In this document: positions 3,000-58,188 of the stretch, in pieces
How the letters are laid out: each line of letters starts with the position of its first letter
Numbering within the stretch: the stretch's first letter is position 1
Source of the DNA: Macrostomum lignano
Lineage: Eukaryota
Length of the DNA: 64,000 nucleotides
Assembly: GCA_002269645.1 (NCBI GenBank)
Contig: NIVC01003412.1
Coordinates: 35,280-99,279, forward strand
Direction: 5' to 3'
Notes under the pieces: model-generated
The model's input: the letters and a program-made list of their open reading frames with translations, nothing else
Database searches by the model: none
Told to the model about the DNA's origin: nothing
Program-made: the position numbers and the translations under genes

Positions 3000-4414
3000 A
3001 ATCAGTCAATACACCTCATTTTTAGCATCCTGTTTGCTAGAACCGCTTCCAACGGATTCATTTCTTGCATTCTGTTTTTCAGAACCGATTCCAACGGATT
3101 CATTTCTTGCATTCTGTTTTCCAGAACCGATTCCAACGGATTCATTTCTTGCATTCTGTTTTCCAGAACCGATTCCAACGGATTCATTTCTTGCATTCTG
3201 TTTTCCAGAACCGATTCCAACGGATTCATTTCTTGCATTCTGTTTTCCAGAACCGATTCCAACGGATTCATTTCTTGCATTCTGTTTTCCAGAACCGATT
3301 CCAACGGATTCATTTCTTGCATTCTGTTTTCCAGAACCGATTCCAACGGATTCATTTCTTGCATTCTGATTTCCAGAACCGCTTCCAACGGATTCATTTC
3401 TTGCATTATGTTTGCTAGAACCGCCTCTTGTAAATTGTAACATCTACACACGGATTGGATGGCCCATCGACCTTTTAAGCGAAGGATTCTGATTTTTCAA
3501 TCAGATGACTATAATAATGACTATGGTGACTCGACTATAATTAATATCAGTGGCGTTGACACAGTAGCAGGTGATGCTGTGTCAGATGGTTTAGTAATCG
3601 TTGAAATGAAGTTAGCAGCCCTTAGCAACAGTTCTGAAATTGCTGAAATGACAGCCCGAGTATTGCAGCTTGTGAGCTCACGCGCAGTGCTTCTGCTCTC
3701 TGGAAAACTTATGAGAACGAACATTGAACTGCTACAGTTACTGAACTCGACAGACGCTTTGTCTGATGCATCAACTTTCAGGGTTGAGCACGGACCTGAC
3801 ACTGCAGCTGAACCACTGAAAGACAAGATGATGCTTAAAGTTTTAGGATGCATTTTAATATAAATAAAAACTAAGACAGCAGCCATGTTCAATGCTGACT
3901 CACACGAACCCTTTAGCTGTGGCAACCGGCTTCAATTCACACGCACCAAAACCGTTTCTTTTAGGAGAGAGCACTGAGGCATTGGCTGCACTGTAGAACA
4001 TGCCGAGCCGCACTGGGCTGCTCAAGTTCTCAAGTTCAGAGGCCGTCTGCACGGGTTCAACGAGAGTCTGGCTGTGTCTGAAAGCGTTTTGTTGCTCACT
4101 TTTATAATAAAATAGACAGGGAGATGGAGATTAAAAACACATTCTGCTGAGACACCGCTCACTTGCACTAATGAGACTGCAAATATGACATGTTGGAGAA
4201 GCTGTCACAGCTGTCACAGACGCTGTCACATTCACAGCGTAGCAGTTTCAGTTGAAGCTGAGCAATGTCTCAGTGAGCAATGTCTCAGTGAGCAATGTCT
4301 CAGTGAGCAATGTCTCAATGGCAGAGTCCAGGGAGAATGAGCAGGAGTCTCAGCTTGACTTGAGCGGCACGTTGATACCTTGAGTCCCAGCTTGCCTCCA
4401 CCGTGAGCGGGAAC
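3000..4414 (-). pseudogene. Receptor paralogue A (exons 3-5 only, disrupted)
   Basis: CTL-like exon 4163-4414 has a 15-bp unit (gagcaatgtctcagt) x4 that creates stops. Exon 3904-4077 has an 8-nt duplication (gaacttga x2) with frameshift. The last exon (GSAAVSGPCSTLKVDASDK...) is near-identical to paralogue E but the TM region is broken by stops. No exon 1-2 upstream. Confidence 0.75.
3035..3425. repeat. 42-bp tandem repeat, about 9 copies, in tail region of paralogue A
   Basis: agaaccgattccaacggattcatttcttgcattctgttttcc in tandem; gives 14-aa periodic ORFs in several frames. Confidence 0.95.
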
Positions 4415-4795
4415 CTAAAATAGCAATGTAATTTTATTTTCTCAATTTTCGGAACACAATTACTTTGGTCGAGTGGAGACCGTAGCACAACTTCCAGGTG
4501 CTCGGTGACCTGAGCGCCGTTATGCCCGAGAGATACGACCGACAATGAACTAGAAAGATGCATCTAGATATAGCTCACTCAATAGAGTCATCCTATCTTT
4601 CTGTTAAATAAAGCTTTCAATAAACTGTTTAAATTTTGTGTTATTTTAATCTTCAAAAAAAATCTGGGATACATTATTACCAAAACTATTATTGAATTCA
4701 TGAACAAAATTTCAAGAAACTAAAACACATTCACACAAACATTCAAGTTCTCACTTACATTGAATTTGCGTGGTATGCAAACAACAATCCAGCAG

Positions 4796-7700
4796 TTACT
4801 GGAATCGAAGACGTAACGACATTACTTCTAATGCATATCTTGCTTTGCTGAGGTGGAAACTTTTACAGCTTTCGGTGGCTAACTTAATTATATAATTTTT
4901 CAACACGAATAATGCAATGCAAAATTTTTGTGGATGAGTGTAGCTCCAGCGCTGAGTCAAAACTGTAAAACTAGCCATCCAGTGGCGCAGCAGGTTGCCA
5001 ATCAATGCGCCGAATGACGCATCTGGTAGTGCATCGAGTGATGCATCGGGCGGGGCATCAGGTAGTTCATCGGGAGGCTCATCGATTTGTACATCATTTG
5101 GAGCATCCGATTGCGCATTGATTGGTGAATTCGGTGGCATAACATCCAGTGGAACACCTGGTGGTGGTGCATCAAGTGGCTCATTGAGCTGTGCATCATG
5201 TGGCGCATCCAGTGGTGCATCGAGTGGCTCATCTGGTGGCTCATCTGGTGGCTCGTCGGGTGGCTCGTCGCGAAGGGCATCAAGTGGCGCATCCGGTGGC
5301 TCATCGGATGGCTCGTCGGGTGGCTCATCGGCTGGCTCGTCGGGTGGCTCATCGGCTGGCTCGTCGGGTGGCTCATCGGCTGGCTCGTCGGGTGGCTCGT
5401 CGGATGGCTCATCAGGTGGCTCATCGGCTGGTTCATCAGGTGGCTCATCGGCTGGTTCATCAGGTGGCTCATCGGCTGGCTCATCAGGTGGCTCATCGGC
5501 TGGTTCATCAGGTGGCTCATCGGCTGGCTCATCAGGTGGCTCATCGGCTGGTTCATCAGGTGGCTCATCGGGTAGAGCATCAAGTGGCGCATCCAGTGGT
5601 GCAACTGGTGGTTCATCGGGTGGATCATCGCGTAGAGCATCAAGTGGATCATCCAGTGGTGCATCGGCTGGTTCATCAGGTGGCTCATCGGGTGGCTCAT
5701 CAGGTGGTTCATCGGCTGGCTCATCAGGTGGATCATCGCGTAGAGCATCAAGTGGCTCATCCAGTGGTGCATCGGCAGGTTCACCAGGTGGCTCATCGGC
5801 TGGTTCATCGCGTAGAGCATCAAGTGGCGCATTCAATGGCGCATCAATTGGCCAACTATAAATGGCGTTTTGGGCCATACTGCGCTGATCGTATGGGCAG
5901 CTCTCGTTTAAAAGGTAGCAGTTTTCTGAAGTACTCGTTGAAGCCTTGCTTGCATTACCTACTGAAGCGCCACCTGAAATCCCAGTTTCATGCTTAATCA
6001 AAGGTTGGAAAACATTTTTCAGTGGTTCAATATCAGCATTTCCTTTCTCAACAAACTGCTCAGAACTATTTAATGAGGTGTAACGTCTTTTGCAGACGAT
6101 AATTATCACAATGGTTATAATTACAAGGACCACCAGAATCGGACAGGAAACTCCAACAATTACAGCCAAGTTACTTGCTGGAGCTTCAGTTGAGGTATGG
6201 TCTGGTGCTGATTGCACTGTTTCTGATAATAACATTCTGCCACTTGATTCAATAGAATTTATCGGCTCTTTAGCGGTCCATTTCTGTCGCGGCGTTTTCA
6301 GAACTTTCCAAATGACCGTCTTAGCGAAACAGCTGGCTGGATAGGGTCCCATAGTGCCTCCTCTCTCAGGAAACTTTACAAGAAATGGAATCTGGCTGCT
6401 ACAGCTTTTCGATTTGATTTCCGCTCTGTCCGAAGCATCCACATTCATAGTCACGCACGGACCTGTCGCGCCGTTTGACTCTCTGTAGTTATTTAAAGGT
6501 GGTTCCAGGTTAACTCGCAGCTTATTTTTCATAGCCTCTTCTGTTTTACAGAAGATGAAACGGAATTACTCACACAAAACCCTCAGATCTGAGAACAGGC
6601 TTCAATCCACATTCACCGCTATCCTGTCTGATTAGAGAGGTCACTGAGGCATCGGCTGCACTGTAGAACATGCCGAGACGCACTGGCTGGCTCAGGCTCA
6701 GGGGCCGTCTGTACGGGTGCAACGACAGTCTGGCTGTGTCTGAAACCGTTTTGACGCTCATTTTTATAATAAAGTAGCCATGGAAATTGAAAACAAATTA
6801 TCAGAGTCGTTACTCACTTGCAGCAATCAGACTGCGGATTTCAGTCATGCTGGAGAAGCTGGCCAGCTCAGCATCGCCTCTGATGCTGGACATTGCGACT
6901 GTTAAATTGGCTTTGACTTTGCTCACAGCGTAGCAGTTTCCGTTAAAGCTGAGCATGTCTCTGTGGCAGAGTCCAGGGAGAATCAGCAGGAGTCTCAGCT
7001 TTACCTGGGGGGCACGTTGGTACCTCGGATCCCAGCTTGCCTCCACCGTGAGCGGGAACCTAAAATAGTAATGTGATTTTTGTTTACCAATTGTCGGAAC
7101 ACAATTATTTTGGTCGAGTGGAGACCGTAGCGCAAAGTCATAGTGCTTGTTGACCTGAACGCCTTTATGCCCGAGAGATTTGACCGACATTGAACTAGAA
7201 AGCTCCTAGAATTATTGATTAACTTTAACCATTGTATATTTTTATACTCGTAGTCAAGGTAAAACATCTTAGATCTACCAATATATTTTAACGTCTTGTT
7301 ATTTGTACCTGAGGACATCTAGATTATACTCGTACGAAACGACCAACTAACTACCGTAACTGTATTTCCCGCAACTAGCGCTTCTAAATAGGTTAAGCAA
7401 AACAAAGCTGACCGCGAGGTCGAACTTAGTGAGTAGTACGCCGGTTTCAGTGTTAGTTTTTAAATTTGTAATTAATTTAATTGTTATGCTGTATTTTCTC
7501 ACAGTATTGTCAATAGCGAGTCTGAGAAAGAATAATGTTCATAGCAGACTGAATTGCCATGGAACTTTCATGGAACAACCGTGGAATTACCACGGATTTT
7601 CGACGGAATTACCGTTTGATGTTTTCAGAGTGTTGCTACTTTTCAATTTCTATAGCTATTTGATCCTGTTATTATTTCAATCGCACCCCGTGTGAGCTAT

Positions 7701-8875
7701 ATCCATGCTCGTGCTCTATGTCAGTGAAATGGGCATGACTGTTTGCCTTCTTGAGTTGATCTCCATTACATTTTTTCTCAGTCTGAAAATTTTCAAGCAC
7801 CAAAGGATCTCTCTATCTCATTGACGAACATGGATTTTTGCGGTTGGACGCGAAACATCCCAGCAGTCACGGGAATTTCTCCTCCGCTGTAGCTGATGAC
7901 CAACTTTGCTGATCCAGTTTGATTCTCTCCCGATTGTAAGCGTAAGTCGGTGTTGTCGGCAGAACCAATGAGCAACCCCTGTAAGACAAGCTGCATGTCT
8001 TCTTGAGCAGCAGAATTCTTAATTATCCACCTGCATCTCCTGTAGCTCGTATCCAACTCGTCGGTCAGCACTCTCGGAATGATGCTCTCGTCTCGGTGGA
8101 AAAAATCGTCAACTGTTATCAATAATGTGAGCCCATTCACGCAGTAGTGGTTGGCGCCTTGGCAACTGGAAATGCGGCGAAAACGAAGACACTGACTGTA
8201 ATAAACAGTGACACAAACTGGTGAACCGGTCAAAAATATTGACCAAATCATCGCTTTTCAAGGGCGGGTGCTAGAAATTAAGAAAATGGGTTTACTCGAG
8301 AAAGCTTGACTGCAACTGTTCGTACACTGCTGTCTGAGCGTTTGTGTAAAAAATAGCTGCTCCCATAGTCTTATAGTTATCAATGCTGGCAAGGGGGGCC
8401 GTAGCCCAGCGGTAGCGCAGCTGCTCTGGTGTGCCGCGACCCAGGCTCGATTCCAAGTGCAGCCACATTAATTTGGGGCTGGATTGGAATTTCGGCTTGG
8501 CTCGCCTGTGCAATTAACGGCCTTGAGAGCCAACCCCCCAAGAGGCAGTGAAATGTACATGCCTAAGAATTAATAAAGTTAGGGCCGCTGTACACTCCTG
8601 TGTGAGTGTGTGCCTGCGTAACGTATCCGCGCGCTTGTATGCCTGCTCAGGGGAGTCGGCGAAATGGGCAGTAATGCCTCTCGCCGGTTGTGTGCCTATG
8701 TCGCCTAAAGTGCGCCAGGGTGCACACAATCCCCCTGCCTCTAATAAAAAATAAAAAAAATCAATGCTGGCACATCTAAAGTCAAGATTTAACGGATTAA
8801 AAGGCAAACTTACACTGATACAGTCCGACAGAAAATCGTCACAGTTGCCAATGTCAGCAGGCTGACAGCACGCAT
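4796..8875 (-). CDS. Receptor paralogue B: SP - CUB-like - CTLD-like - spacer - TM - Pro/Asp/Glu-repeat tail
   Basis: Exons 8814-8875 (MRAVSLLTLATVTIFCRTVS, signal-peptide-like), 7830-8165 (336 nt; CQGANHYC...CRWII), 6818-7059 (242 nt; LCHRDMLSFNGNCY...AELASFSSMTEI), 6574-6739 (166 nt; QPVRLGMFY...GECG), 4796-6482 (GPC...TM LAVIVGVSCPILVVLVIITIVIIIVC-KRR). All joins are GT-AG with phases 2,2,1,2; the exon-2 donor GTTCGT is weak. Confidence 0.75.
5170..5830 (-). repeat. 12-bp coding minisatellite (PPDE/PADE/PLDA) in paralogue B tail
   Basis: About 55 units of a ccacctgatgag-type 12-mer, in frame in ORF 4796-6532. Confidence 0.9.
8392..8759 (+). mobile_element. tRNA-derived SINE with 13-bp TSD, in intron 1 of paralogue B
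   Basis: Head ggggccgtagcccagcggtag (A box) ... ggctcgattcc (B box), A-rich tail, TSD atcaatgctggca at 8379-8391 and 8760-8772. Confidence 0.85.
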
Positions 8876-13944: not shown

Positions 13945-16289
13945 TCAATAGACCGTGCTTTGTGGAAGACTGCATGGGGTCGCCAACATTCTCCTTCGAT
14001 ATGGCATCTGGAGATCATCTTGTTCATCATCAGATGAAGCAGCAGCCAATAATGGCGTTACGTTATGGCTTTCGCTGGCGCTGTTTTTCGACAATTTTTT
14101 CTTTCTTTTAAAGACGATTATTCCCAGTACTAAAACAAAAATTAGAGGGAGAATCACAATCCCTAGAGTGATACCAACGTTCAATGAATCGCTTTCAAGT
14201 GTTTTTGCTGAGCGGCTCTTGGGTGAGTTCCAGCCTTGAATAGTTTTATGCGTGAGCACTTTTGCGGTACTCGGGTAGCACAGGTGATTCAGTTCTCTAA
14301 AAATCGCATTTCTGGAGATCATCTTTGTTTCTTGATCGCAATTTCTGATCACCGCTCTCTCAGGAAACATAATAAGAATCGGAAATGGTCTTCTGCATTC
14401 GCTGAAATCAAAGATTGATCTCTCCGATGCGTCTACTCTAAGAACAGAGCACGGGCCTGCGATTCGACGTGGCTCGCTAAAAATCGAAATAGTAAAATTT
14501 ATTTACGAGGTATTGTCCTAGCACTCAACTTTAACCAGAGCAATGTGGTAACACTTACAACTCTCTGAAACTCGATATTTGCTGAAGTTTGATGTAGTTT
14601 TTAAAATCTCCGTCCATACTGACTATGGAAAGCACTGAGACGTCAGTCCTCTTGTAGAACATTCCGAGACGCACTGGCTGAGTCAAGTTCAGAGGCCGTC
14701 TGTACGGATGCGCAGACAGTCTGGCTGTGTCTAAAACCGTTTTGATGCTCATTTTTATAATAAAGTAGCCACGAAGATGAAAATTTAAAACAGATGTTGA
14801 AAGTTGCTACTTACTTGCAGCTATCAGACTGCGGATCTCAGACATGCTGGAGAAGCTGGCCAGCTGAGCATCGCCTCTGATGCTGGACATTGCGGCTGTC
14901 ACATTGGCTCGGAGTTCGCTCAAAGCGTAGCAGTTTCTGTTGAAGCTGAGCATGTCTCTGTGGCAGAGTCCAGGGAGAATGAGCAGGAGTCTCAGCTTTA
15001 CCTGGGCGGCACGTTGATACCTCGGGTCCCAGCTTGCCTCCACCGTGAGCGGGAACCTAAAATAGCAATTCAAAGCATGATATCAAATGGGCATGACTGT
15101 TTGCCTTCTTGAGTTGATCTCCATTACATTTTTTCTCAGTTTGAAAATTTTCAAGCACCAAAGGATCTCTCTATCTCATTGACGAACATGGATTTTTGCG
15201 GTTGGACGCGAAACATCCCAGCAGTCACGGGAATTTCTCCTCCGCTGTAGCTGATGACCAACTTTGCTGATCCAGTTTGATTCTCTCCCGATTGTAAGCG
15301 TAAGTCGGTGTTGTCGGCAGAACCGATGAGCAACCCCTGTAGGACAAGCTGCATGTCTTCTTGAGCAGCAGAATTCTTAATGATCCACCTGCATCTCCTG
15401 TAGCTCGTATCCAACTCGTCCGTCAGCACTCTCGGAATGATGCTCTCGTCTCGGTGGAAGAAATCGTCAACTGTTATCAGCATTGTGAGCCCATTCACGC
15501 AGTAGTGGTTGGCGCCTCGGCAACTGGAAATGCGGCGAAAACGAAGACACTGACTGTAATAAACAGTGACACAAACTGGTGAACCGGTCAAAAATATTGA
15601 CCAAATCATCGCCTTTCGGGCAGGTGCTAGAAATTGGGAAAATGATTTTACTCAAGAAAGCTTGACTGCAACTGTTCGTACAATGCTGTCTGAGCGTTTG
15701 TGTAAAAATACATTTATATGTTTCATATAGCTATAGCTGCTACATTCACCCGTGTTTCATCGAACGCACAGTGCACCGATACAGTATAGCGGTATATCAA
15801 GACGCAGTTTCTATTGACACTAACACTGTATTCTGAGGGCCTTAGATTCTGTGGAAAAATTCCTGTCAGGGACTACTTAGTCCTTGGGTAAGAGCTTAGG
15901 CGATTATTACTGTGATGCTTAATTCTTATTGGCTAGGAAACATTAAAAATGCGACAAGGGGCAGGGCTGCGGACAAAAATGGGGATAGAGCAGGGGGGGG
16001 GGCAGCCAATCACTCTTAAGCGCGCAAAACAGAGGGAGAAAGAATGGGGGAGTGCAGGCAGATAGAGGGAGGGGGTCCACGAAGACGGCTGGGAGAGGAG
16101 GTTGGCGCAAACACTGGCCGAAGGGGGGGAAAGAGTGGAATTCACGGCCCGTGTGACCAAGTGCTCGAGACTGCGTATCAATGGAATTGTACAGGCACAA
16201 AACTGTGTATAAAATTCTTACCCAGGGCTCGTCAGCACCTGGAGCAGCACAAACACTGCTGTCAAAGTCGGAAGTGGTAAATTTAGCAT
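13945..16289 (-). CDS. Receptor paralogue C
   Basis: Exons 16222-16289 (MLNLPLPTLTAVFVLLQVLTSP, GTAAGA donor), 15188-15523 (336 nt, near-identical to B exon 2), 14815-15056 (242 nt CTL-like), 14559-14730 (172 nt), 13945-14476 (GPC...TM VGITLGIVILPLIFVLVLGIIVF-KRKKK). Phases 2,2,1,2. Confidence 0.75.
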
Positions 16290-26356: not shown

Positions 26357-29300
26357 CTATTGGAAACAATTTAAGTTATCCTCTCCGCTCTCATTGGGTT
26401 CGAAACCGGTGCTCTCCGTCCGATTCTGTGCCGAAGTCTGTCGAACGCCATTGAAGTTCGTTGTTTCTGGTGTTTCTAGCAAACTGTAAAACGTGTCGTC
26501 CATGCTGTCCATCCGATTCGGACAATGCCTAGAAGGCGATTGACTTTCCATGCCATCTTGCCCTAAACTGTAATACTTATCTGAATCGAGGCTGGTCATT
26601 CTGTTAAACTTTGGATTAAAAGTCTCGTCAGGTTGTGCATCTGCTGTGAAATTCTGTGGATTTTCAGGTGTAAAATCAGGTGATTCTTCAGGTATTTCGT
26701 TGGTTAGGCCACCAGAAGGAATCGAGTTCCGTGACAGACAACTGTAATACTTGTCTGAAAACCAGCTGACGTTTGGGGTGTGGTACTCTGAATCCAAGCT
26801 GTCCGCCCGATTTTGAGCGAATCTTTGACCCAGTTCGGTGCCAGGTGTCGCATCGGGTGGTGCATCAGGTTGTGCGTCAGGTGGTGCGTCAGGTGGTGCA
26901 TCAGGTGGTGCATCAGGTGGTGCATCAACTGTCCCACCAGAAGTAGTCACATCGGGTTCCAGACTGTGCTGATCGGCTAAAGACGAGCTAAAGTTTGGGT
27001 TTTTTGGAGTGCCAGCAGCAGCATCGACTTTATCACTTTCTGAAGCGTCTGCTGGATTCCTAGGTTTTGGTTCAATTAAAGGTTGTGAAACACTGCTCAG
27101 TTTAACATCTTCTTTCTCCACAGACGGCTCAGAACTATTTAATGAGCACAACCGTCTTTTGTAGACAATAAACACCACAATGGTTGCAATAAGTACCAGC
27201 AGAATCGGACAGGAAACTCCAAAAATGATGGTCAACTTGCTTGCTGGAGCTTCAGTTGAGGACCAGTCTCGTATTGGTTGAGTCGTTGCTGTTGGTGATA
27301 TTCTAATACCGGTAATTAGATCAGAAGAATCTCTAGCTACAACACTAGGAGCATCAGTATATGCAATGAAATGCATCTTAGTTGTCTGCTTCTGTTGCAG
27401 AGCTTCGATAACTTTCCAAGGGACCGCCCTCGCGCTACAGCTGTCTGCATAATTGTATCCTGCCGTGCCTCCTCTCTCAGGAAACTTTACAAGAAATGGA
27501 ATCTGGCTGCTACAGCTTTTCGATTTGATTTCCGCTCTGTCTGAAGAATCCACATTCATAGTCACGCACGGACCTGTCGCGGCGTCTGAATCTCTGCAGT
27601 TATTTAAAGGTGGTTCCTGATTTACTCTCAGCTTATTTTTCATAGCCTCTTCCGTTTTACAGAGATGAAACGGAATTACTCACACAAATTTCTCAGATCC
27701 GAGAACCGGCTTCAATCCACATTCTCCGCTATCATTTCTGATTAGAGAGAGCACTGAGGCATCGGCTGCACTGTAGAACATGCCGAGACGCACTGGCTGG
27801 CTCAGGCTCAGAGGCCGTCTGTACGGATGCACCGACAGTCTGGCTGTGTCTGAAAGCGGTTTTGATGCTCATTTTTATAATAAAGCAGACACGGAGAATG
27901 AAATTTAAAACAGATGTTGAAAGGCCACTCACTTGCAGCAATGAGATTGCGGATCTCAGACATGCTGGAGAAGCTGGCCAGCTGAGCATCGCCTCCGATG
28001 CTGGACATTGCGGCTGTCAAATTGGCTTTGACTTTGCTCACAGCGTACCAGTTTCCGTTGAAGCTGAGCATGTCTCTGTGGCAGAGTCCAGGGAGAATCA
28101 GCAGGAGTTTGAGCTTTACCTGGGCGGCACGTTGATACCTCGGATCCCAGCTGGCCTCCACAGTAAGCGGCAGCCTGAAGGCAACGTTTGTTAAATTTTA
28201 GCGGGGTTTTTATATTTTTACTTAGGGCTGGCTGCTCGATGACTGCTCGCATCTATCCCTTCAGCCTATCAGTCAGACCAAGGTTTGGCGGCTTTTAAAG
28301 CCTGACTTGTGCCCTTCCTGTGCTGAATTCGTTGCACAGTCTGTCTTATTCTACTCGTACTGTCTTTTAAGTTGAAGCGGCTTGTGATTGGCTGATGTCG
28401 TTTTCTCTTATTTATCTTCCCATCATCTCTCTACTCGGTAAATATTTGATTATTTATTCTGAAGGGAGCTGGAGCACCGGAGGGACGCAGGATTGAGCGC
28501 GCATGTCATTAGCACGCATTTTGAAACTGCTCTACGTGACACAAGCGCGCATTATCACTTTAAGTGGCAGCTTACTTTACTTTTAATCGCTCGTCTTTGT
28601 ATTTGATCCAAAAATATCCAAAAATATATTCCTGACTGGTTTCGCATGCCTGTTTAATGCTAGATTTTTTTCTCTTGGGCTTGGCTCACAGTCATCGACT
28701 TATCTTTGAGGTGACTGCCGTCAAAACTGTCTGCGCTCTTGTGTCACTGCCTGTGCGCGCTTATGTCAAATATTGTAAAAAATATACGCAATGGCAGTAG
28801 TGTCTTGCGCGCTTATTCAGCCCTCCCCACCGGGGTACAGAGGTCACCCTCTTGGAGGCGTTTTTAAAAGCAGCCTCCAGAATCTTTAACCATCTTGAGC
28901 AAATAAATTACACGTTTGATGTGCATAGCCATGTAATTTAAACTCATAAACGATCCTTACTCAAAAGCAATATGTGCATTTTTCAGTACTTACAGCTGCC
29001 GGATCGGGCGGACGAGAAAGAGCCCTGCAGTTGCCAAAAGTTGCCCTCCCGAGCTGTTGAGGACAAGATCCGCCTGACTTTTCACGTTGTTAATGGACAG
29101 AGAAGATCCAGCTGTTGAATTTATCGGTTCTGCCAACAAGACAAGTTTTTGCATATCATTTTCTGTTGCAGCAGCCTTGATGCTCCATCGGCAGGTTCGA
29201 TTGCTCAACGGTCTGTTGTCATTGGTGTCGCCAAGAACTTGGGGAATGATTTTTACGTCTCCATTGTTGATATCAATTGTAATTGGACTGACGACTCCGT

Positions 29301-29480
29301 TTGTGCAGTAGTATGTTTCGGCCTGGCATTCGGATCTATGCGTTTGTGTGGGTTATTTCTGTTTGGATACTTCTATGCTAAGATCAAATGCAAATCGAAC
29401 GAGCAGAGCAAAGTGGGAAAAAAGAGCTTACTTGAGACACGCGAGTAGGAGCCAGCAGATGGCTAGGGCACAGGTTCGAA
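26357..29480 (-). CDS. Receptor paralogue D
   Basis: Signal-like exon ending at 29432 (IRTCALAICWLLLACL; start codon not located), 28994-29335 (342 nt; ECQAETYYC...CRWSI), 27933-28174 (242 nt), 27684-27849 (166 nt), 26357-27593 (TM LTIIFGVSCPILLVLIATIVVFIVY-KRR; PPDA repeats; Tyr motifs). Confidence 0.75.
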
Positions 29481-31895: not shown

Positions 31896-33930
31896 CTATT
31901 GCTGATCAGAGCTCGTGCTTGCCATCTGGTTTGAATCAAAATTAGGACACGTCTGGAAGTCTTCTTCGGAAATTGGCTGGCTTGGAGGATCTTGATGCTG
32001 ATCAGAGTTTATGCTTTCCATCTGGTTTGAATCAAAATTAGGACACGTCTGGAAGTCTTCTTCGGAAATTGCCTGGCTTGGAGGATCTTGATGCTGATCA
32101 GAGTTTATGCTTTCCATCTGGTTTGAATCAAAATTAGGACACGTCTGGAAGTCTTCGTCGAAAATTGGCTGGCTTGGAGGATCTTGATGCTGATTAGAGC
32201 TTACTATTTGATTTGGATCTTTGAACTGTTCTGGATCATCAGAACTTGTCGGATTTGGCTTTACGGCTTTCATGTGACTTTGACTCATCAAACCTGTTGT
32301 GTACTCCTCTGGATCCTCGAAGGTGACATGTTTCGGATTTTCAGTTGATTCGGCAGTCTTCTCACCAGATGGACCTGCTGAGAGTCCAGGCTGCACATAC
32401 AAATTTGAAGATGCATTGGATTTCGGATTCGGCTGAGGCGGCTCGCTTACATAGGCCACTAAAGCAGAACCTTCTTCATTTTCTATTTCAACTTCTTTTT
32501 TGCTATCATTCTGCATTGCTGCTCTTCGCTGCGTGTTTTGCCTCTTCTTTTTAAGCACGAAGTATAATACAAAAGATCCAATCAAAACGGCAACAATTAC
32601 TGCACAGATGACTGCAACTATTATTTGCAGGCTGGTTTGAGAACTTTCCGGTGTTTTTTCAACGAGCAGCGTTGACATAGTACCAGGCGATGCTGTATCA
32701 GGTGGTTTAGTAATCGTTGAAATGAAGTTAGCAGCCCTTAGCAACAGTTCTGAAATTGCTGAAATGACAGCCTGAGTATTGCAGCTTGTGAGCTCACGCG
32801 CAGTGCTTCTGTTCTCTGGAAAACTTATGAGAACGAACATTGAACTGCTACAGTTACTGAACTCGACAGACGCTTTGTCTGATGCATCAACTTTCAGGGT
32901 TGAGCATGGACCTGAAACTGCAGCTGAACCACTGAAAGACAAGATGATGCTTAAAGTATTAGGATGCATTTTAATATCAAGAAAAACTAAGACAGCAGCC
33001 ATGTTCAATGCTGACTCACACGAACCCTTTAGCTTTGGCAACCGGCTGCAATTCACACGCACCATAACCGTTTCTTTTAGGAGACAGCACTGAGGCATTG
33101 GCTGCACTGTAGAACATACCGAGACGCACTGGCTGGCTCAGGCTCAGGGGCCGTCTGTACGGATGTACCGACAGTCTGGCTGTGTCTGAAACGTTTGCAA
33201 TGTTAAATTAGAAAAGAAATCGGCCAACGCAGAATACATTTGCTTTATTTTCAACAACTCACTTGCAGCTGTAAAGTTATGGATTTCAGACATGCTGGAA
33301 AAGCTGGCCAGCTGAGCATCGCCTCTGATGCTGGACATTGCGACTGTTAAATTGGCTTTGACTTTGCTTACGGCGTAGCAGTTTCCATTGAAGCCGAGCA
33401 TGTCTCTATGGCAGAGTCCAGGGAGAATGAGCAGTAGTTTGAGCTTTACCTGGGCGGCACGTTGATACCTCGGGTCCCAGCTTGCCTCCACCATGAGCGG
33501 CAGCCTGAAGCATCAAATCAAATTGTTTTTATCACGAATTACATGCTTTTACTGGATGTAAAAGCAGTGAGTATTCTCTACTCACAGCTGTCCAATGGGC
33601 AGAGCGAAAAACATTCCAGCCGTCACTGGAACCTTTCCACCGTTGTAATTTACGACAAAGTCTGCAGGACGTTTCTGCTCGCCTTTTGGCGGTGGCGAAC
33701 GTCTGTCTACTGCGGCATCCATGGTCACTCCCTGAAGCACCAGCTGCATTTCATTTCTTGTCACAGAACTGTCAATGCTCCATTGGCAGCTCTTGTAGCT
33801 CAGTTCAGAGTCGCCGCTCTCACCAAATATCACAGGGACAATCGTTTCCTCTTGGTTTTGTAATTCGTCAATTTTTACTGGACTGATCATATTATTGTTG
33901 CAGTAGTGATTCGCGGCCTCGCATTGGAAT
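31896..33930 (-). CDS. Receptor paralogue E (signal exon not located)
   Basis: Exons 33586-33930 (345 nt; FQCEAANHYC...CQWSI), 33263-33504 (242 nt), 33020-33185 (166 nt), 31896-32931 (TM LQIIVAVICAVIVAVLIGSFVLYFVL-KKKR; 3 x 32-aa tail repeat). The first ~58 aa of track ORF 31896-33107 are intron/off-frame read-through. Confidence 0.78.
31905..32200 (-). repeat. 96-bp coding repeat x3 in paralogue E tail
   Basis: SDQHQDPPSQPISEEDFQTCPNFDSNQMESIN repeated; DNA period 96 bp (31997 vs 32093). Confidence 0.9.
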
Positions 33931-35084
33931 CTTGAAGGTGGAATGCGTGGAAGTTTTGCAGGTACATGAAAAAGTCTGGACCGACATCAATCTATCCGTA
34001 TTCCTAGTTGCTTCAGGTAAATTTAGCCAGCGAGTTTGCTAGTTTCCTTCAGCAAACTCAACTAACTAAACCATACTAAACTAAACTAGCGAGCCATAGG
34101 CAATACGTTGTCAAACTCAGATTATCAAGGAAGTAGGTACATAGTTGTTCAAAATTAGGTACAGAGATGAACAAATAATCATATTTTTAGTTCGTAGTAA
34201 CACCTTCACACCTAATCACACTAGAACACTTACTTTAAACACGTTAGTAGTAGCAGGACAAGCACAGGATCGCATCTTTGACTCTGAAAAATTCGGCGAA
34301 TTAAATCAACCACCATGTTCGTTCGAAAACTTGTCATCGTGCTTGCTGGTGATCGGTAGCTATTGTAGGTATATTACAGGTATATTTACAAGTTACTGTA
34401 GGTAGGAGTCACAGCTTAATATAGCCAAAGCTCCAACTCCTTATTTAGGTATCTTATCATTTGAGCACGGGAAAGGTTGTTGTTGGGCAGCATAACTCAA
34501 AACAGTGGGTCGACCTTTTCACTTGCTTTGTGCATATACAGTATGTTGTAACTAAATTTAAGTAGCTCGTAATTTGAGATTAGACAATCGAAACCGATCG
34601 ACAGTAAATAGGCTTTTGTACGTTTTTAGTTCCTTGTTTTTGCTTAACAACTGACTTTACTGTCAACTGATATTCCTAAATAAACTCTTTCTTTGCAAAC
34701 AAGACAGGAACACTTACCATATCGTTATGCATGAGTATCTGGCCTTCATAAGCCAGTAAAATGCTGAGGACCTACTTGGCGGAAAGTTTTTCGTGTCAGT
34801 ATTGTACTGTTTTGCTACACAGAATGGAAAAGCATACTGTTTCTGCAAATGCTTTTTATGCATTTCTCTTGTACGCTCAAATTGTACGCTGCCCTACTGT
34901 ACAGTGGAGACACAATATAGAAGAACTTTCTCACTTGCAAGCAGAAGAGAAAAGGCTTGGATTAAGAGCCAGTGGCTGCCTGCTTTAGGCTAGAAGGACT
35001 GAAAATGAGAACGAATGTACAGCTACGAAAAATATAGAATGGAAAAGCGGAGTAACAGAACGACAGAGTGTACGGAGTGTCTGG

Positions 35085-38487: not shown

Positions 38488-40023
38488 TTACACAATTCGC
38501 ACACCCGACTTTGATGGCTTAACAACAGCATAGCCTCCAAGAATGTTACCACCCGCAGTTCGCATGAACCAAAGTTTCTGTACAGAGTTTGGCAGATAGT
38601 CAAAAAAGTAGGTCAAAATAACCCACTTGACAAACAGTAAAATTAATAACACGAAAATCGGCAGCAGAGTGATGATGGAGCCATAGAGAGCTGCATTTTC
38701 CCAGCGAGAACTTTTACTCTGCAGTTTCTTTCCAACCGAATTCAAGACGCCGGTTTCTTCTAGAAGACGAATTCTCTGCAACAAATCAGATTGATTGCAG
38801 CTGCTACGCTCCGATGCTTGAGCAGTGATGAAGTCAGGCTCTACGACCAGCGAAGGCCTTGGGACGCTGCAGTTGCCGAAACCCAGAGCCGGTTTGCCAT
38901 CGTCTGCCGCTTTTAGTAGAAAAGCGCACGGACCGGCTGCGTTGCTTACAGTATGCCTGCTAAATCAAAGCTCAAAAAATTGTTATTACTCGACGAATTA
39001 TACCGGCCCGAGACCAAAGCGGTGTCCTAAGACTCAAATTGGCGATATGAGACTTAAAGCGGCACCCTGAGACCCAAAGTAGCGCCCTGAGACCCAAAGT
39101 AGCGCCCTGAGACCCAAAGTAGCGCCCTGTGACCCAAAGTAGCGCCCTGAGATCCAAAGTAGCGCCCTGAGACCCAAAGTGGCGCCCTCTGAGACCCAAA
39201 GTGACGCTCTGAGACCAAAGTGGTGACCTCTGAGACCCAAAGTGGCGCCCTAAGATCCAAAGTGGCGCCTTGAGACCCAAAGTAGCGAGCGCCCTGAGAC
39301 CCAAAATGACATCCTGAGACCCAAAGTGACACCTTGAGACCTAAAGTGGCGCCCTGAGACCCAAAGTAGCGCTTTGAGATTTAAAATAGCGCCCTGAGAC
39401 CCAAAGTGGCGCCCTGTGATTAAAGTGACGCCCCTGACGACTCAATAGTGGTGACTTCGACTGTAAAGAGTCCTTGAAACACAAAAATGTCGCACCTTAA
39501 GGGTTTAGATATACTTAAAAGTAATAAAATATAAAATGGCATAAATTGTACATTCAAGAGTATCTTTTTAACTCACGTCAGCTCCGACAAATTTCCAATG
39601 GGAACCAGTCCGCAGGCGCCGCTCTGATTTCTGCTCAGGGCAAGCAGGATGTCATCAGCTGGTTCGTAGAGCAGGCCAACTCTGATTGATGGGCTGTGCT
39701 CGAACAACTGGTGCAGCATTTCGCCTGAAACTTTGAAGGCAAATGAGTTCGTAAAGCTTTCACTCCAATATTCTCCGTTGAGTCAGTGTTCCAAAAATAT
39801 GTTTTATATGTGCATAAATGAAACCCAAAACTCACTGACAGCAAGAAAGTCATCAAGTTCATCTGTACTGGAGAAGCTGGCCAGCTCAGCATCATCTCCG
39901 ATGACGGAGCTGATGAAGTCTGTCAAGCTCATGCTTGCATCGCTTCTATAGTAGCAGTTGCCATGGAAACTGAGCCTGCCCCGACTGCAAGCTGTCCGAT
40001 TAGCAGCCTCAGCTGTTTCGCAC
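38488..40023 (-). CDS. Receptor paralogue F (divergent; exons 3-5 intact, exons 1-2 not found)
   Basis: Exons 39836-40023 (188 nt; ACSRGRLSFHGNCYY...DAELASFSSTDEL), 39577-39724 (148 nt; SIRVGLLY...GACGLVP), 38488-38959 (AAGPC...FGNC...TM LYGSIITLLPIFVLLILLFVKWVIL). Same phases 2,1,2; no stops. Confidence 0.72.
39062..39425. repeat. 20-bp minisatellite inside a paralogue F intron
   Basis: gagacccaaagtagcgccct, about 17 copies. Confidence 0.92.
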
Positions 40024-40829
40024 CTGCAGATCATGATAATAAAATGATAAAAGGTAATGCAGTTTAATATTTAACAAAATGAGTTTTTTAATAATTTCTT
40101 TGCTTACTTTGTGAAGACAATTAACGAAATGCAGAGAAAAAACGAACAACCGAATGTACATATTTTGCGCATGTTTCGTTTTAGACTAAATATTGTTAAT
40201 TAAGGCTAATTTGGTTATATTCGTAACGTTGATCACAAACGGCTTTTAGTTCAAGTCTTAGAAGTCTACGAGCTCGTATAAGTATCTCGTTCAGTGGCAT
40301 TTCCATTATATTTAAGCTACTGTGTGAGAAAACCCTATCCAGTGGAGTCTCAAATAGACTTACTTGATGAACAATAGAATGTACACTAGCTAAAGTTTTG
40401 CCCCCCTTCGGGGAGCAGAAATAATTAATATTCGTCTAATATAATATACCTTTTAGCAGGAGTACTTTAAGTGTCTTTCTTAAGCTTAAGCTTAAAATAG
40501 GAATTTTTGGAGATCGTTAATAACGCATTTTAGGTAAAACAAAACTATCAACTTTTTACAGTTTTTTAGTTTAGAGCCCTGTATATGTCAACGTGTTTGA
40601 TAAAAATTATTTTTATCATTTTTGATAAAAAATGGCCTTCGGGTGGCCAATAAGCAAGGGACGAATCCTTTTAAATGAAAAAAAATTCTTAGGGAGGGGG
40701 GCTAGGAATCGAATTCTCATTTTAATTCCAGGCTTATGTACCAATAAAACATGTTTGTGCAGAATTTTATAACAGACATTGAAATTCAACCATACTTGCC
40801 TTCTTTCAGAGCTACTTCTACCAGTATGC

Positions 40830-42657: not shown

Positions 42658-42714
42658 TAATTTTTTTGTCTTGGCGTTAAAAGGCTTTAATTAAAAAAAC
42701 TCTACTCTCTAAAA

Positions 42715-47680: not shown

Positions 47681-47709
47681 TGTTTAGCAGTTTTGTGTTT
47701 TTAATGTTT

Positions 47710-55418: not shown

Positions 55419-56210
55419 AATAATATAATATTCAATATAATACAATATAATATAATATTTTATAATTCAATACTTACTATTATGCTATAATAATGCTATA
55501 AAATCGCAAGGTAAAAGCAAGTTGCGCTGTCCGTATATTTTCTGATTCTTTTTAACAGAGCAAAGCCGTGAGTGTGGTATTTAATAAAACAAAGTTTTGA
55601 CGATTCGCAGAGATATAATGTTTATCTATAAAGTATAAAAAAGGATTTGATTATATGAAAAAGGATAGTAAGATATCTAATAGAAATTTGATAAGGTATT
55701 TTTAACGCAGATGGTGTAATAACGATCCTAGCAAAAGAAAAGACTATAATTACGAACTACTTAACACTAATTACTACAAACGAGAATTATTACTATTACA
55801 CTATAGCAAATATGAATCATTTAAAAATGAATTTCTGTTTATTTTATAAAATGTTTTTCAATTGCGAATTCGCTGGTCTTGAATAACATTCGGAATCAGG
55901 GTTAAAAAACACGATGTAACGAGTACGGTATATTTACTTAGCGGAGGCTATAAAGTACCGTACTAGTAGTAGTAATAGAATAATACTAGAATCTTCAGTG
56001 TATGAATTTAATAACGTATGATCTGTTAGTACCCTGGAATAAATGACGCACGAAATAGTCAAGGACTACCTCAAGCAGTAACATACATCTACTTAAGTTG
56101 TCCTTGGAAATAGTATCAACTAAAAATTAATACGAGTGTATCTTGATTAAAGTTTTAAGAATACATTTGCTTTCTATTGAATTATCAAACAATTACAAAG
56201 ATCAAAGGAC

Positions 56211-58188
56211 TTAAACTACGCTCGTATCTGGTAGCATTTTTATATTTGCATCCAACTGTCCGAGATTCGCACTGTCCCTCTTTACTGTTCGAAGTCGTGA
56301 TATTAAGTGCAAGAAGCAAGGACACACAGCTACTTGCAGTAAACATGCAATGGCGACAGCCAAAGCACGAGCCCAAATTCCTGCACAATTCTCCTCCGGA
56401 TATTGTTTTGTTTGATTGCGAAGCATCCCTCCTGCCTGCAGAGGATATGCGTCTTTTTCCATCGACAAAACTTTTGGAATAATTTCTGGACAGAAACGGC
56501 TAATTATTCTTTTATCACTACGAGCAACTTGCGGAAATTTTATGAGCGCCAGAATCGAAGCGTCACAGCTACCGAACTCAACCAGCGCTTTGTCTGTTAC
56601 ATCCAAACTGAGATGAGCGCATGGACCGACAACAGTATTTGAGATTCTGAAATAGTTTTACCCGTAGTAGCCAATAAATGCTTTTATTTGTGACATGTTT
56701 TGGTCCCAATTTCAAAGAGTTGTAGCTGGAGCCCCTCAGCGCACAAGAGAGGTATTTTTTAAAAGCTTGAAATCTCATATCGTCTAAGTCTTGATATCTA
56801 GCTAGTTGCACTTTTCTCTAGCTCGAAAACTTCACATTGTCCAGGATGTCAAAGATCGAGCTCGTGAAGTTGTTAAAGTATGAAGTTTTAAGCCTCGCTT
56901 ACACCGAGGCCAAATAGGCTTTGTGTGTTTGACCAAATTCTGTGTGATCACCCAGACTTCATTCCTTTTACATCGGTCGTGTGATTCTATGGCAGTGTGA
57001 ATGGGCCTTTAGGTGGTTTATGAACTTTCGAGCTTGTGAAATATGGTTATTGCAGTGTTTTAACCTAACTCAAACAGATTATTTCGATGACTCACTTAAA
57101 TGTCTCAAGTGTAGATAACGGTTCTAGACCGCATCCTGCACTATTGTTTCCTCTTTTTAGCATGGACACAGTTTGATCCTGACCATCGGAGCCGAGGAAC
57201 ATGCCAAGGCGGAGTGGAGTGGTTGACTCAGATTTAGAGGCCGTCTGTACGGGTACTCAGACTCTCGAGCGATATCTACAGAATATTTAATAAGAATGTG
57301 TATTGCTCGTGGACTGAACTTTATATTAAACAAGCTGTTGTTTTTACTACAACTATTTAGCTTTAAGAATATACATCTTTAATATTATTCTACATTTACC
57401 CTCACGACACTTTTACTAGCAGGGGATGACAGGGCCAAATAAAGTAATAACATATTACTAAAAATTCGTAAGATGATAAATTTATCAATCATTGATTCGT
57501 AGTAGTTCTACGAATTTTTTCAGAACTTACTTGCTGCAACGAACTCGTTAATTTCTGCCATGCTGGCGAAGCTGGCCAGCTCGACATCACCTTCAATAGT
57601 AGACAAAGCTTCAGTTAGATTTTGTTTAAAGGCACTCACGGCGTAACAGCTACCATTGAAGCTGAGCATGTCATTGTTGCATATTCCTGGAATCGGGATC
57701 AGATAGCGAAGTCGAATTGGCGTTCTGCTCTGGATTTTTGGGTCCCATTTGATTGTGTTAGTGAAGAGGTTTCTGAAACCATAGGAAAGCAGTTTGTTTG
57801 GTTAACAGAAAACGTCGGTATAGTTTTTAACACTATTTGGAAAACTTTATTCCTGACCTTCGACGCAGTGGGTACAGTCGAAACAATCCACGCGTTGCAA
57901 CAAACGCATCTTCTTGCGAAACAACAATCAAGTCTTTACGGGCTGTTTCATTTTCTCTGACCGCGACTTGCTCGTCTGGAGTTGTCTGAATACGTAACAA
58001 TTTGAAGACTCTTCCAGGTGCTGGAGGTTCGAATACGAATTAACCATCTGCATCGTCTGTAGCTTTTGTGCTGCGTGTCCAGCTCGTTTGGAATTCTGGG
58101 CACAATCGTTTCGTCCCGATGATAGAAGTTGTCGAGTCCTACACTAGTTGTCAGACCGTTGACGCAATAATGATTGGCCGCGTCGCAG
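56211..58188 (-). pseudogene. Receptor paralogue G (divergent, two frameshifts)
   Basis: Exon 57858-58188 (331 nt, +1 nt near CRWL), 57531-57772 (242 nt; GICNNDMLSFNGSCY), 57096-57275 (5-nt duplication ccactccact), 56211-56646 (VGPC...FGSC...hydrophobic IWARALAVAIACLLQVAVCPCFLHLI). Confidence 0.72.

What the first reader, a model, noticed from the sequence alone, without database searches (positions are those of the whole stretch)
3000..58188. Seven-member tandem array of an unnamed CUB-like/CTLD-like type-I receptor family
Seen: A-G share exon order, phases (2,2,1,2), a 242-nt lectin-like exon (B, C, D, E, G), C-x(4-6)-YC and C-x-W-x-I motifs, a GPC motif, one TM followed by basic residues, and very different tails. 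Two copies are pseudogenes. Birth-and-death evolution, conserved ectodomain scaffold and variable tails are typical of diversified immune or allorecognition receptor clusters (inference). I do not recognise the family by name.
Basis: partly seen in the sequence, partly recalled or inferred. Interest (0 to 1): 0.82.

Follow-up and report, generated by a model that had tools for sequence, protein, structure and literature searches.

The report
Flatworm CUB-like/C-type-lectin-like receptor gene cluster
This stretch of the flatworm Macrostomum lignano genome carries seven tandem copies (five intact, two broken) of a flatworm-specific, uncharacterised cell-surface receptor built from a CUB-like and a sugar-site-less C-type-lectin-like domain, which is evolving by duplication, exon swapping and gene loss; what it recognises is unknown.

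Summary
Seven related genes lie head-to-tail on the minus strand (3530-58351). B, C, D and E are intact five-module genes. F is intact but lacks the CUB-like module. A is a truncated pseudogene. G has two frameshifting insertions.

The GT-AG introns, phases 2,2,1,2, the 242-nt exon, the sequence motifs, a single TM followed by basic residues, and unrelated repeat-rich tails are all confirmed.

Both domain guesses hold, but only beyond Pfam's reach:
- The C-terminal module matches C-type lectin-like domains (CTLDs) by profile (CD69, E=1.5e-6) and by predicted fold (Foldseek probability 1.0).
- The N-terminal module best matches CUB domains by fold only.
- The CTLD lacks the Ca2+/sugar motifs and the C1-C4 disulfide.

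The family was found only in M. lignano: 40 of 1.84 billion cluster representatives.

The "conserved scaffold" is largely concerted evolution. Exons 3-4 and their introns are homogenised among B-E, B is a C/D chimera, and the CUB-like exon is only about 38% identical between paralogs.

A syntenic second copy of the cluster shows reciprocal pseudogenisation. dN/dS of the ectodomain exons is 0.15-0.40, with no sign of positive selection.

An immune or allorecognition role remains untested conjecture.

The parts
3530..4413 (-). Copy A, a truncated pseudogene. It keeps an exon-3 remnant (4413-~4170), exon 4 (4078-3904) and the 5' part of exon 5 (3815-~3530). It has no exon 1/2, no TM and no tail.
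   Evidence: Exon 3 is disrupted by a short tandem expansion (cattgagacattgctcactgaga...) with in-frame stops. Exon 4 carries a 12-nt duplication. The ORF ends at ...STPLILIIVESP* before any TM. Exon 4, intron 4 and exon 5 are 90/97/92% identical to E.
3016..3423 (.). 42-nt tandem array (9.7 copies) directly downstream of truncated copy A.
4796..8251 (-). Copy B, intact, 838 aa. Exons are 8251-7830, 7059-6818 (242 nt), 6739-6574 and 6482-4796. The cytoplasmic tail carries about 27 copies of an 8-aa (P/A)DEPPDEP unit.
   Evidence: B is a chimera. It is C-like from upstream to about 6706 (95-97%) and D-like from 7059 to about 6355 (88-100%).
13945..15609 (-). Copy C, intact, 455 aa. Exons are 15609-15188, 15056-14815 (242 nt), 14730-14559 (172 nt) and 14476-13945. 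The tail is short (54 aa).
26357..29481 (-). Copy D, with an intact ORF from exon 1 onward (678 aa). Exons are 29481-29432, 29335-28994, 28174-27933 (242 nt), 27849-27684 and 27593-26357. Exon 1 has no ATG of its own.
   Evidence: The exon-1 acceptor (tctag|ATT) is in frame with the ATG that ends the M. lignano spliced leader. Alternatively an upstream mini-exon supplies the start, as in E. This point is inferred.
31896..34732 (-). Copy E, intact, 630 aa when started at the ATG at 34337. Exons are (34732-34718 +) 34283/34337-34234, 33930-33586, 33504-33263 (242 nt), 33185-33020 and 32931-31896. The tail has 3.2 copies of a 96-nt unit.
   Evidence: The homeolog P0001 (88% identical) is a transcript-derived GenBank model with the same exon junctions.
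38488..40172 (-). Copy F, intact, 289 aa, and lacking the CUB-like module. Exons are 40172-40108 (signal peptide), 40023-39836 (188 nt; a CxxAEAAN remnant fused to the CTLD start), 39724-39577 and 38956-38488. Its last intron holds a 20-nt tandem array (39006-39451).
   Evidence: The homeolog F' is intact and 84-96% identical. dN/dS is 0.15-0.18 for the two larger exons (188 and 469 nt) and 1.00 on 8 substitutions for the 148-nt exon.
56211..58351 (-). Copy G, a frameshifted pseudogene. Exons are 58351-58269 (putative), 58188-57858 (331 nt, with a 4-nt ACGT insertion), 57772-57531 (242 nt), 57275-57096 (180 nt, with a 5-nt CACTC duplication) and 56646-56211.
   Evidence: The homeologs P0056 and P0013, and L001, lack both insertions.

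Best explanation
**What it is.** The window comes from Macrostomum lignano. It holds a tandem array of a lineage-restricted family of single-pass type-I membrane proteins. From N- to C-terminus each protein has:
- a signal peptide;
- a CUB-like beta-sandwich;
- a long-form C-type lectin-like domain (CTLD) without the Ca2+/carbohydrate site and without the C1-C4 disulfide;
- a short stalk and one transmembrane (TM) helix followed by a basic stop-transfer;
- a disordered cytoplasmic tail that is different in every paralog.

**How it most likely works (inferred).** These are surface receptors that bind protein or particulate ligands rather than sugars. Specificity would come from the fast-diverging CUB-like module and the C-terminal half of the CTLD. 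The tails are built from private tandem repeats (PDEP, DAPP, 32-aa units, YxxL-type motifs in D). They would couple binding to different endocytic or signalling partners.

**How the array evolves (shown).** Tandem duplication, unequal crossing-over and gene conversion homogenise exon 3, intron 3 and exon 4 among B-E and create chimeras; B is the 5' part of a C-like gene joined to the 3' part of a D-like gene. Other events are module loss (F), tail-repeat expansion, and pseudogenisation (A and G here, D' in the second genomic copy).

**Biological role.** Not established. It could be microbe or environment sensing, mating or self recognition, or tissue adhesion or uptake.
For: - **Organism and family:**. 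All 40 relatives among 1.84e9 cluster representatives that were checked are M. lignano.
- **Gene models with canonical splice sites and conserved phases:**
- **Exactly seven copies:**
- **CTLD:** the profile against PDB gives 74 hits, all CTLDs, with the best E=1.5e-6. The AF2 model has pLDDT 81 and pTM 0.80. Foldseek gives 75 hits at E<=1e-3, almost all CTLDs, with probability 1.0 and target TM-score 0.55-0.68.
- **CUB-like:** the top Foldseek hits are Neto2, neuropilin a1, C1r CUB2, MASP, enteropeptidase and TMPRSS6, with probability 0.97-0.99 for the CUB-domain hits Neto2, neuropilin and C1r. The C-x-W-x-I motif is present.
- **TM and basic residues:**
- **Mosaic identity, introns included:**
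- **Exon 3 concerted evolution:** paralog identity equals homeolog identity (about 90-93%). For exon 2, D-D' is 99% but D-E is 60%.
- **Purifying selection on the ectodomain exons of D, E and F:** omega is 0.15-0.40 (F's 148-nt exon is the exception at 1.00 on 8 substitutions).
- **Reciprocal pseudogenes:**
- **Tail repeats:**
- **Spliced expression of E':**
- **Another tandem pair of divergent members on a different scaffold:**
Against: - No Pfam CUB or Lectin_C match in any member.
- The N-domain profile finds nothing in PDB by sequence. The Foldseek E-values for CUB are only 1e-3 to 1e-2, from a model with pLDDT 70-85.
- Ligand type, tail function and physiological role are all inferred. 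No expression, localisation or binding data were available.
- In the homeologous 22.8-kb locus only E' carries an annotated transcript. Some 'intact' copies may be silent.
- The 5' ends of B, C, D and G are not settled.
Confidence: 0.72

Rival explanations
1. One reading: a diversified innate-immune or allorecognition receptor cluster. The paralogs would recognise microbes or non-self tissue, and variation would be maintained by diversifying selection.
For: - Tandem array with birth-and-death evolution.
- The CUB-like module is highly divergent between paralogs, at about 38% aa.
- The CTLD fold is closest to NK-cell and myeloid receptors such as CD69, NKR-P1, DCIR and LOX-1.
- The tails vary between paralogs, and D has YxxL-type motifs.
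- The family is lineage-specific.
Against: - dN/dS between the two genomic copies is 0.15-0.40 in the ectodomain exons. Power is low because each exon has only 10-25 substitutions.
- No EPN/QPD/WND sugar-binding motifs.
- No ITAM or ITIM.
- No challenge-expression or polymorphism data.
- Part of the apparent 'scaffold conservation' is gene conversion.
Confidence: 0.25
2. Reproduction-related surface proteins, acting in sperm-egg, sperm-female-tract or mating-partner recognition. In an outcrossing hermaphrodite under strong sexual conflict, such genes could turn over rapidly.
For: - The family is restricted to the lineage and turns over quickly.
- CUB domains (spermadhesins) and CTLDs recur in reproductive proteins of other animals. 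This rests on established knowledge and was not tested here.
- The tails and the CUB-like module diverge rapidly.
Against: - No expression data.
- The proteins are membrane-anchored, unlike typical seminal-fluid proteins.
- Omega is below 1 in the ectodomains.
Confidence: 0.15
3. Tissue-specific adhesion, endocytic or scavenger receptors, for example of gut phagocytes or epidermis. They would have no role in recognising variable ligands. The paralogs would differ mainly in tail-directed trafficking.
For: - The CTLD is of the non-lectin kind, as in layilin, chondrolectin, LOX-1 and the CD93 family.
- The ectodomains are under purifying selection.
- The tails are acidic, proline-rich and repetitive, with YxxPhi-type motifs compatible with sorting signals.
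Against: - The CUB-like module is very divergent between neighbouring paralogs.
- Pseudogenisation is rapid and reciprocal.
- The family is absent outside Macrostomum.
Confidence: 0.3
4. A largely decaying, functionally irrelevant gene cluster in a repeat-rich region of a recently duplicated genome. Most of the 'intact' ORFs would not be expressed.
For: - Two of the seven copies are broken here and another is broken in the second copy.
- Only E' has an annotated transcript in the homeologous locus.
- The array is interspersed with satellites, a LINE RT and a THAP transposase.
Against: - Omega is 0.15-0.40 for the D, E and F ectodomain exons, against 0.7-0.9 for pseudogene G.
- Splice sites and phases are intact in five copies.
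- The GenBank annotation was filtered against repeat overlap, so missing models do not show silence.
Confidence: 0.1

Closest known systems
Vertebrate C-type lectin-like receptors without a sugar site (CD69, NKR-P1/Clr, LOX-1, and the NK gene complex clusters)
   Same: - CTLD fold with the long-form N-terminal hairpin cysteines and the C2-C3 disulfide.
- No Ca2+/carbohydrate motif.
- Genes sit in tandem arrays that evolve by birth-and-death.
   Different: - Those receptors are type-II membrane proteins without a CUB domain and keep the C1-C4 disulfide. Here the topology is type I, a CUB-like domain precedes the CTLD, and C1 and C4 are both Ser.
- Sequence similarity covers only the N-terminal half of the CTLD (E about 1e-6).
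- The Pfam Lectin_C model does not match.
Type-I membrane CTLD proteins (layilin, chondrolectin, CD93/thrombomodulin/CLEC14A group)
   Same: Signal peptide, N-terminal extracellular CTLD, one TM and a cytoplasmic tail. They bind non-sugar ligands (established knowledge).
   Different: - None has a CUB domain.
- They are conserved single-copy genes, not lineage-specific arrays.
- No specific sequence relationship was detected.
CUB-containing type-I receptors (Neto1/2, neuropilins, DCBLD2, CDCP1)
   Same: The N-terminal module gives its best fold matches to their CUB domains. Like them, the proteins are single-pass and carry modular ectodomains.
   Different: - The canonical second CUB disulfide is absent, and the Pfam CUB model does not match.
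- The partner domain is a CTLD rather than LDLa, FA58C or MAM.
Nematode CLEC proteins that combine CTLD and CUB domains (C. elegans clec gene expansions)
   Same: A lineage-specific, tandemly expanded invertebrate family that combines CTLD and CUB folds. This comparison is recalled from the literature and was not tested here.
   Different: - Most of those proteins are secreted, match Pfam Lectin_C and CUB, and have a different domain order.
- No detectable sequence relationship to this family (one search found only M. lignano proteins).

Membership tests
C-type lectin-like domain (CTLD) superfamily | Significant sequence-profile similarity to known CTLDs | tested here: met
   The profile of the C-terminal module hits 74 PDB sequences, all CTLDs, with the best being CD69 at E=1.5e-6. 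The match covers the N-terminal half (beta1-alpha1-alpha2).
C-type lectin-like domain (CTLD) superfamily | CTLD fold (two helices, two antiparallel sheets, long loop region) | tested here: met
   The AF2 model has pLDDT above 90 across residues about 140-290. Foldseek against PDB gives probability 1.00 and target TM-score 0.55-0.68 to Langerin, mincle, LOX-1, CD69 and NKR-P1. This is a prediction, not an experimental structure.
C-type lectin-like domain (CTLD) superfamily | Match to Pfam Lectin_C (PF00059) at or near the gathering threshold | tested here: not met
   No hit at E<=1 in E, E<=0.1 in B, C, D and F, or E<=1 in 23 family members.
C-type lectin-like domain (CTLD) superfamily | Canonical disulfides C1-C4 and C2-C3 | tested here: inconclusive
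   Read from alignments A2 and A5.
- The long-form pair (C..DML.F.G.CY) is conserved.
- C2-C3 (GPC ... F..C) is conserved.
- The positions equivalent to C1 (alpha1, 'SSI') and C4 ('L.SFPE') are both Ser.

The assignment of positions rests on my reading of the alignment to CD69 and DC-SIGNR.
Ca2+-dependent carbohydrate-recognition domain (true C-type lectin) | EPN or QPD tripeptide plus the WND motif, which supply the Ca2+ site 2 ligands | tested here: not met
   The sequence shows QPV, KPV, EPL or VPI at the x-P-x position, and (V/I)EF(S/G)(N/D)C instead of WND..C, in all window copies and homologs.
CUB domain | Match to Pfam CUB (PF00431), or profile similarity to solved CUB domains | tested here: not met
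   No Pfam hit. The N-domain profile finds no CUB in PDB. The UniRef names 'CUB domain-containing protein' are automatic. They sit alongside clearly spurious names for sister proteins.
CUB domain | CUB beta-sandwich (jelly-roll) fold | tested here: inconclusive
   Foldseek top hits are CUB domains (Neto2, neuropilin-1/2 a1, C1r CUB2, MASP-1) with probability 0.97-0.99. However, E is only 9e-4 to 7e-2, target TM-score is about 0.5, and the model has pLDDT 70-85.
CUB domain | Four conserved cysteines (C1-C2, C3-C4) with the C-x-W-x-I signature at C2 | tested here: inconclusive
   C-x-W-x-(I/F/L) is invariant, and there is an N-terminal C-x5-YC pair. The second cysteine pair is absent from the window copies.
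Diversified immune/allorecognition receptor cluster | Tandem multigene array with birth-and-death turnover | tested here: met
   Seven copies with two pseudogenes and one domain loss. The syntenic copy has a different pseudogene. A second array lies on another scaffold.
Diversified immune/allorecognition receptor cluster | Positive or diversifying selection on the ligand-binding ectodomain | tested here: not met
   Exon-wide NG86 dN/dS between window genes and their homeologs is 0.15-0.40 for the CUB-like and CTLD exons of D, E and F (one small F exon at 1.00 on 8 substitutions). Site-level tests need more orthologs.
Diversified immune/allorecognition receptor cluster | Induction by infection or non-self contact; high allelic or copy-number polymorphism | not testable with these tools
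   No expression or population data were accessible. A full-text paper search for the gene IDs found nothing.

The most novel reading that the evidence does not exclude
The array would be a flatworm-specific recognition system. A hypervariable CUB-like module, shuffled between paralogs onto a concertedly evolving CTLD core, would give each receptor its specificity for self/non-self, mating partner or microbe. Paralog-private repeat tails would give each receptor its own signalling output. That would make it an independently evolved analogue of the NK-complex or of invertebrate allorecognition loci, in a regenerating, outcrossing hermaphrodite.
Probability: 0.12. Interest if true: 0.8.

Novelty: new variant of a known kind. 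Interest (0 to 1): 0.45.

Why it matters
Platyhelminth surface receptors for microbes, mates or self are almost unknown, and M. lignano is a genetically tractable model with transgenesis and RNAi. This family joins two well-known folds in an arrangement I found nowhere else: type I topology, a CUB-like domain followed by a non-lectin CTLD that has lost the C1-C4 disulfide. It is invisible to Pfam and restricted to this lineage.

The locus is also a clean example of exon-level mosaic evolution. It has a homogenised core, variable flanking modules, tails generated by repeat expansion, and reciprocal gene loss between the copies of a recent genome duplication.

If the paralogs prove to be differentially expressed or polymorphic, the cluster would be an entry point into flatworm recognition biology. 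If not, it is one more lineage-specific receptor expansion.

Tried and rejected
- **Pfam scans.** E, B, C, D, F and 23 homologs gave no CUB, Lectin_C or any other ectodomain or tail domain, only TM-like noise.
- **N-domain profile against PDB sequences.** No CUB or other meaningful hit.
- **First AF2 run.** Full-length P0001 with 9 sequences gave a poor model for the CTLD part (pLDDT below 50). A second run with a 23-sequence alignment of an ectodomain-only protein solved this.
- **Literature.** No paper mentions the GenBank gene IDs. The search for M. lignano with CUB and C-type lectin returned only adhesion-protein papers, which I judged unrelated from titles and abstracts without opening them. 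The 'CUB' hits in the one paper I opened, on seminal fluid, were 'cube' and 'j.cub' DOIs.
- **Upstream signal-peptide exons for B and C.** One candidate turned up for each (8875-8814 and 16289-16222), but the two are not homologous. I left them out and kept the in-frame ATG at 8251/15609.
- **A 25-nt 'intron' upstream of D exon 1.** Rejected as too short.
- **G's frameshifts as assembly errors.** Considered unlikely. They are 4-nt and 5-nt non-homopolymer insertions, and omega is relaxed. It cannot be excluded without reads.
- **tRNA scan.** None found.


Full report
**Source and overall picture.** The window is eukaryotic. The spliced product of the best-preserved copy (E) is 88% identical to a Macrostomum lignano protein, BOX15_Mlig017487g1. 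Every one of the 10 word-index hits and the 20 HMM-search hits whose source I looked up is from M. lignano. An HMM built from nine members was run against 1.84 billion cluster representatives and found only 40 proteins. The family is therefore restricted to this lineage as far as sequence searches can see.

**Check of the observation.** tblastn with ORF and exon peptides and family HMMs run on the six-frame translation find exactly seven copies. All are on the minus strand, in the order G-F-E-D-C-B-A along the direction of transcription.

I built the models by hand from the sequence and checked them by translation.
- **E** has exons of 104, 345, 242, 166 and 1036 nt. Every intron is GT...AG, the phases are 2,2,1,2, and the ORF is 630 aa.
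- **D** has the same layout (50, 342, 242, 166, 1237 nt).
- **B and C** share exons 3-5 with the same phases. Their first coding exon runs on from an ATG 84 nt upstream of the position where exon 2 starts in the others, and I could not find a convincing separate exon 1.
- **Exon 3** is exactly 242 nt in B, C, D, E and G.
- **Motifs and topology.** Each of B-G has one strongly hydrophobic 19-mer followed by K/R residues.
- **Tails.** They are unrelated and largely made of private tandem repeats: a 24-nt unit x26.6 in B, a 96-nt unit x3.2 in E, and DAPP repeats in D.

**Pseudogenes and variants.**
- **A** has no exon 1/2, because B's stop codon lies directly upstream. Its exon 3 is broken by a short tandem expansion with stops. 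Its exon 5 ends before the TM, next to a 42-nt satellite.
- **G** carries a 4-nt insertion in exon 2 and a 5-nt CACTC duplication in exon 4. Database proteins P0056 and P0013 are the intact counterpart and lack both insertions.
- **F** is intact but has no CUB-like exon. A 188-nt exon joins a remnant of the N-terminal C..AEAAN motif directly to the start of the CTLD.

So 'two pseudogenes' is right. 'A-G share exon order' holds only for B-E and G.

**Domain identity.** Pfam finds nothing in any member. The evidence for each module is as follows.
- **C-terminal module.** A profile of the whole family gives only weak PDB hits, but all nine are CTLDs. A profile of the C-terminal module alone gives 74 hits, all CTLDs, led by CD69 at E=1.5e-6 and DC-SIGNR at about 1e-5. 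An AlphaFold2 model of the ectodomain-only homolog P0002, built with 23 family sequences, reaches pLDDT 81 and pTM 0.80. Foldseek then returns 75 PDB matches at E<=1e-3. Essentially all are CTLDs, with probability 1.0 and target TM-score 0.55-0.68.
- **N-terminal module.** It has no sequence-level match. Probability is 0.97-0.99 for the CUB-domain hits Neto2, neuropilin and C1r, but E is only 1e-3 to 1e-2. 'CUB-like' is therefore a reasonable label that rests on fold alone.

From the alignments I read the following.
- The long-form cysteine pair and the C2-C3 pair are conserved.
- The two positions that form the C1-C4 disulfide in canonical CTLDs are both serine.
- The Ca2+/sugar motifs are replaced by QPV, KPV or EPL, with no WND.

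This is a non-lectin CTLD.

**Evolutionary dynamics.** Nucleotide identity along the genes is mosaic.

| Pair | Exon 2 | Intron 2 | Exon 3 | Intron 3 | Exon 4 | Intron 4 | Exon 5 (ectodomain part) |
|---|---|---|---|---|---|---|---|
| B vs C | 97% | 91% | 93% | – | 74% | – | 65% |
| B vs D | 64% | – | 92% | 83% | 92% | 93% | 79% |
| A vs E | – | – | – | – | 90% | 97% | 92% |

- A sliding-window comparison places B's C-like segment upstream of about 6706 and its D-like segment at 7059-6355. B is a recombinant.
- A 22.8-kb piece of GenBank scaffold NIVC01000413.1 (L001) is a syntenic copy, 88-96% identical, carrying G', F', E' and D'. This is consistent with the known large-scale duplication in this genome.
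- For exon 2, D-D' is 99.1% and E-E' 94.8% identical, while D-E is 60%.
- For exon 3, homeolog pairs (D-D' 92.6%, E-E' 90.5%) are no closer than paralog pairs (B-D 92.1%, C-D' 93.0%, D'-E' 90.1%). The variable sites form a patchwork.
- Exon 3, and partly exon 4, are therefore being homogenised among B-E by gene conversion or unequal exchange. G sits outside that group (56-58% to the others, 96.7% to G').
- D' carries a TGA in exon 3 while D is intact, and G is broken while G' is intact. Loss is reciprocal.
- A different scaffold holds at least two more, much more divergent, family genes in tandem.

**Selection.** NG86 dN/dS between window genes and their homeologs is summarised below.

| Region | dN/dS |
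|---|---|
| CUB-like and CTLD exons of D, E and F | 0.15-0.40 (F's 148-nt exon: 1.00, 8 substitutions) |
| Exon 5 of E and D (CTLD end, stalk, TM and tail) | 0.56-0.89 |
| Exons 4-5 of pseudogene G | 0.7-0.9 |
| Exon 3, between paralogs | 0.12-0.40 |

Counts are small, but nothing points to exon-wide positive selection.

**Expression.** The GenBank BOX15 models derive from a genome-guided RNA-seq assembly. P0001 (E') shows the same exon junctions as my E model, plus a 15-nt first coding exon that is also present in the window at 34732-34718. In L001 only E' is annotated, so expression of the other copies is open.

The exon-1 acceptors of D and G have no ATG of their own. They are in frame with the ATG that ends the 35-nt M. 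lignano spliced leader. That would yield good signal peptides: M-IRTCALAICWLLLACLK... for D and M-EFASPRWSHIVVIYLMLFF... for G. This is an inference.

**Interpretation.**
- **Well supported:** a lineage-specific type-I receptor family with a CUB-like plus non-lectin CTLD ectodomain, evolving by duplication, conversion, module loss, tail-repeat expansion and pseudogenisation.
- **Inferred:** the variable CUB-like module, and the C-terminal half of the CTLD, confer ligand specificity for protein or particulate ligands, and the tails diversify downstream coupling.
- **Possible but untested here:** the immune/allorecognition reading. Reproductive recognition or tissue-specific adhesion or uptake are equally open.

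I rate this a new variant of known kinds, namely CTLD and CUB receptors in tandem arrays. Interest is moderate.

Noticed in passing
window 912-1808 (-), with 103/202-nt tandem units at 1518-2147: An ORF of 298 aa with several ankyrin repeats (Pfam Ank_2, E=2e-21). It belongs to a neighbouring, unrelated gene at the edge of the array. Part of it is itself a recent tandem duplication at the DNA level.
   Followed up: partly
window 12331-13167 (-): Two adjacent ORFs with a THAP domain (E=2e-5) and a TNP-like RNase H N-terminal domain (E=3e-7). This is a P-element/THAP9-like DNA transposase remnant between copies B and C.
   Followed up: partly
window 49445-50548 (-): A 367-aa ORF with a reverse-transcriptase domain (RVT_1, E=9e-18), probably a retroelement (not classified further). 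It lies in the 16-kb F-G spacer. The syntenic copy L001 has only about 2.5 kb between G' and F', so the spacer here has been inflated by insertions.
   Followed up: partly
window 21192-23757; 41823-42666; 43051-44362; 45464-47685; 39006-39451; 48718-48974; 60247-60391; 62921-63076: Large satellite arrays are interspersed with the genes. They include an 18-nt unit x140, 23-nt units x37 and x96, a 48-nt unit x27, and a 20-nt unit x22 inside an intron of F. Copy numbers differ from the syntenic locus L001.
   Followed up: partly
window 40970-40999: An interstitial telomere-like repeat, (CCCTAA)5, lies about 800 bp upstream of copy F.
   Followed up: no
window 29481 and 58351 (exon-1 acceptors of D and G); 34283 (E): The first recognisable coding exons of D and G lack an ATG but are in frame with the ATG that ends the M. 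lignano spliced leader (CGGTCTCTTACTGCGAAGACTCAATTTATTGCATG). The start codon may therefore be supplied by trans-splicing. E's equivalent acceptor is used for cis-splicing to a 15-nt ATG-containing exon in the annotated homeolog.
   Followed up: partly
L001 (NIVC01000413.1:294172-317017) and L002 (NIVC01001089.1:367231-392563): L001 is a second, syntenic copy of the cluster at 88-96% identity, with reciprocal gene loss (D' has a stop, G' is intact). L002 carries an unrelated scaffold's tandem pair of much more divergent family members. UniRef's automatic names for family members are mutually inconsistent (CUB, PilZ, Vitellogenin, Exostosin, PAZ, Ricin B and others) and should not be trusted.
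   Followed up: partly
window 56211-56225 (C-terminus of G) and homeolog G': G and G' end in ...DTSVV and ...DASVV, which fit a class-I PDZ-binding motif (S/T-x-V-COOH). None of the other paralog tails end this way.
   Followed up: no
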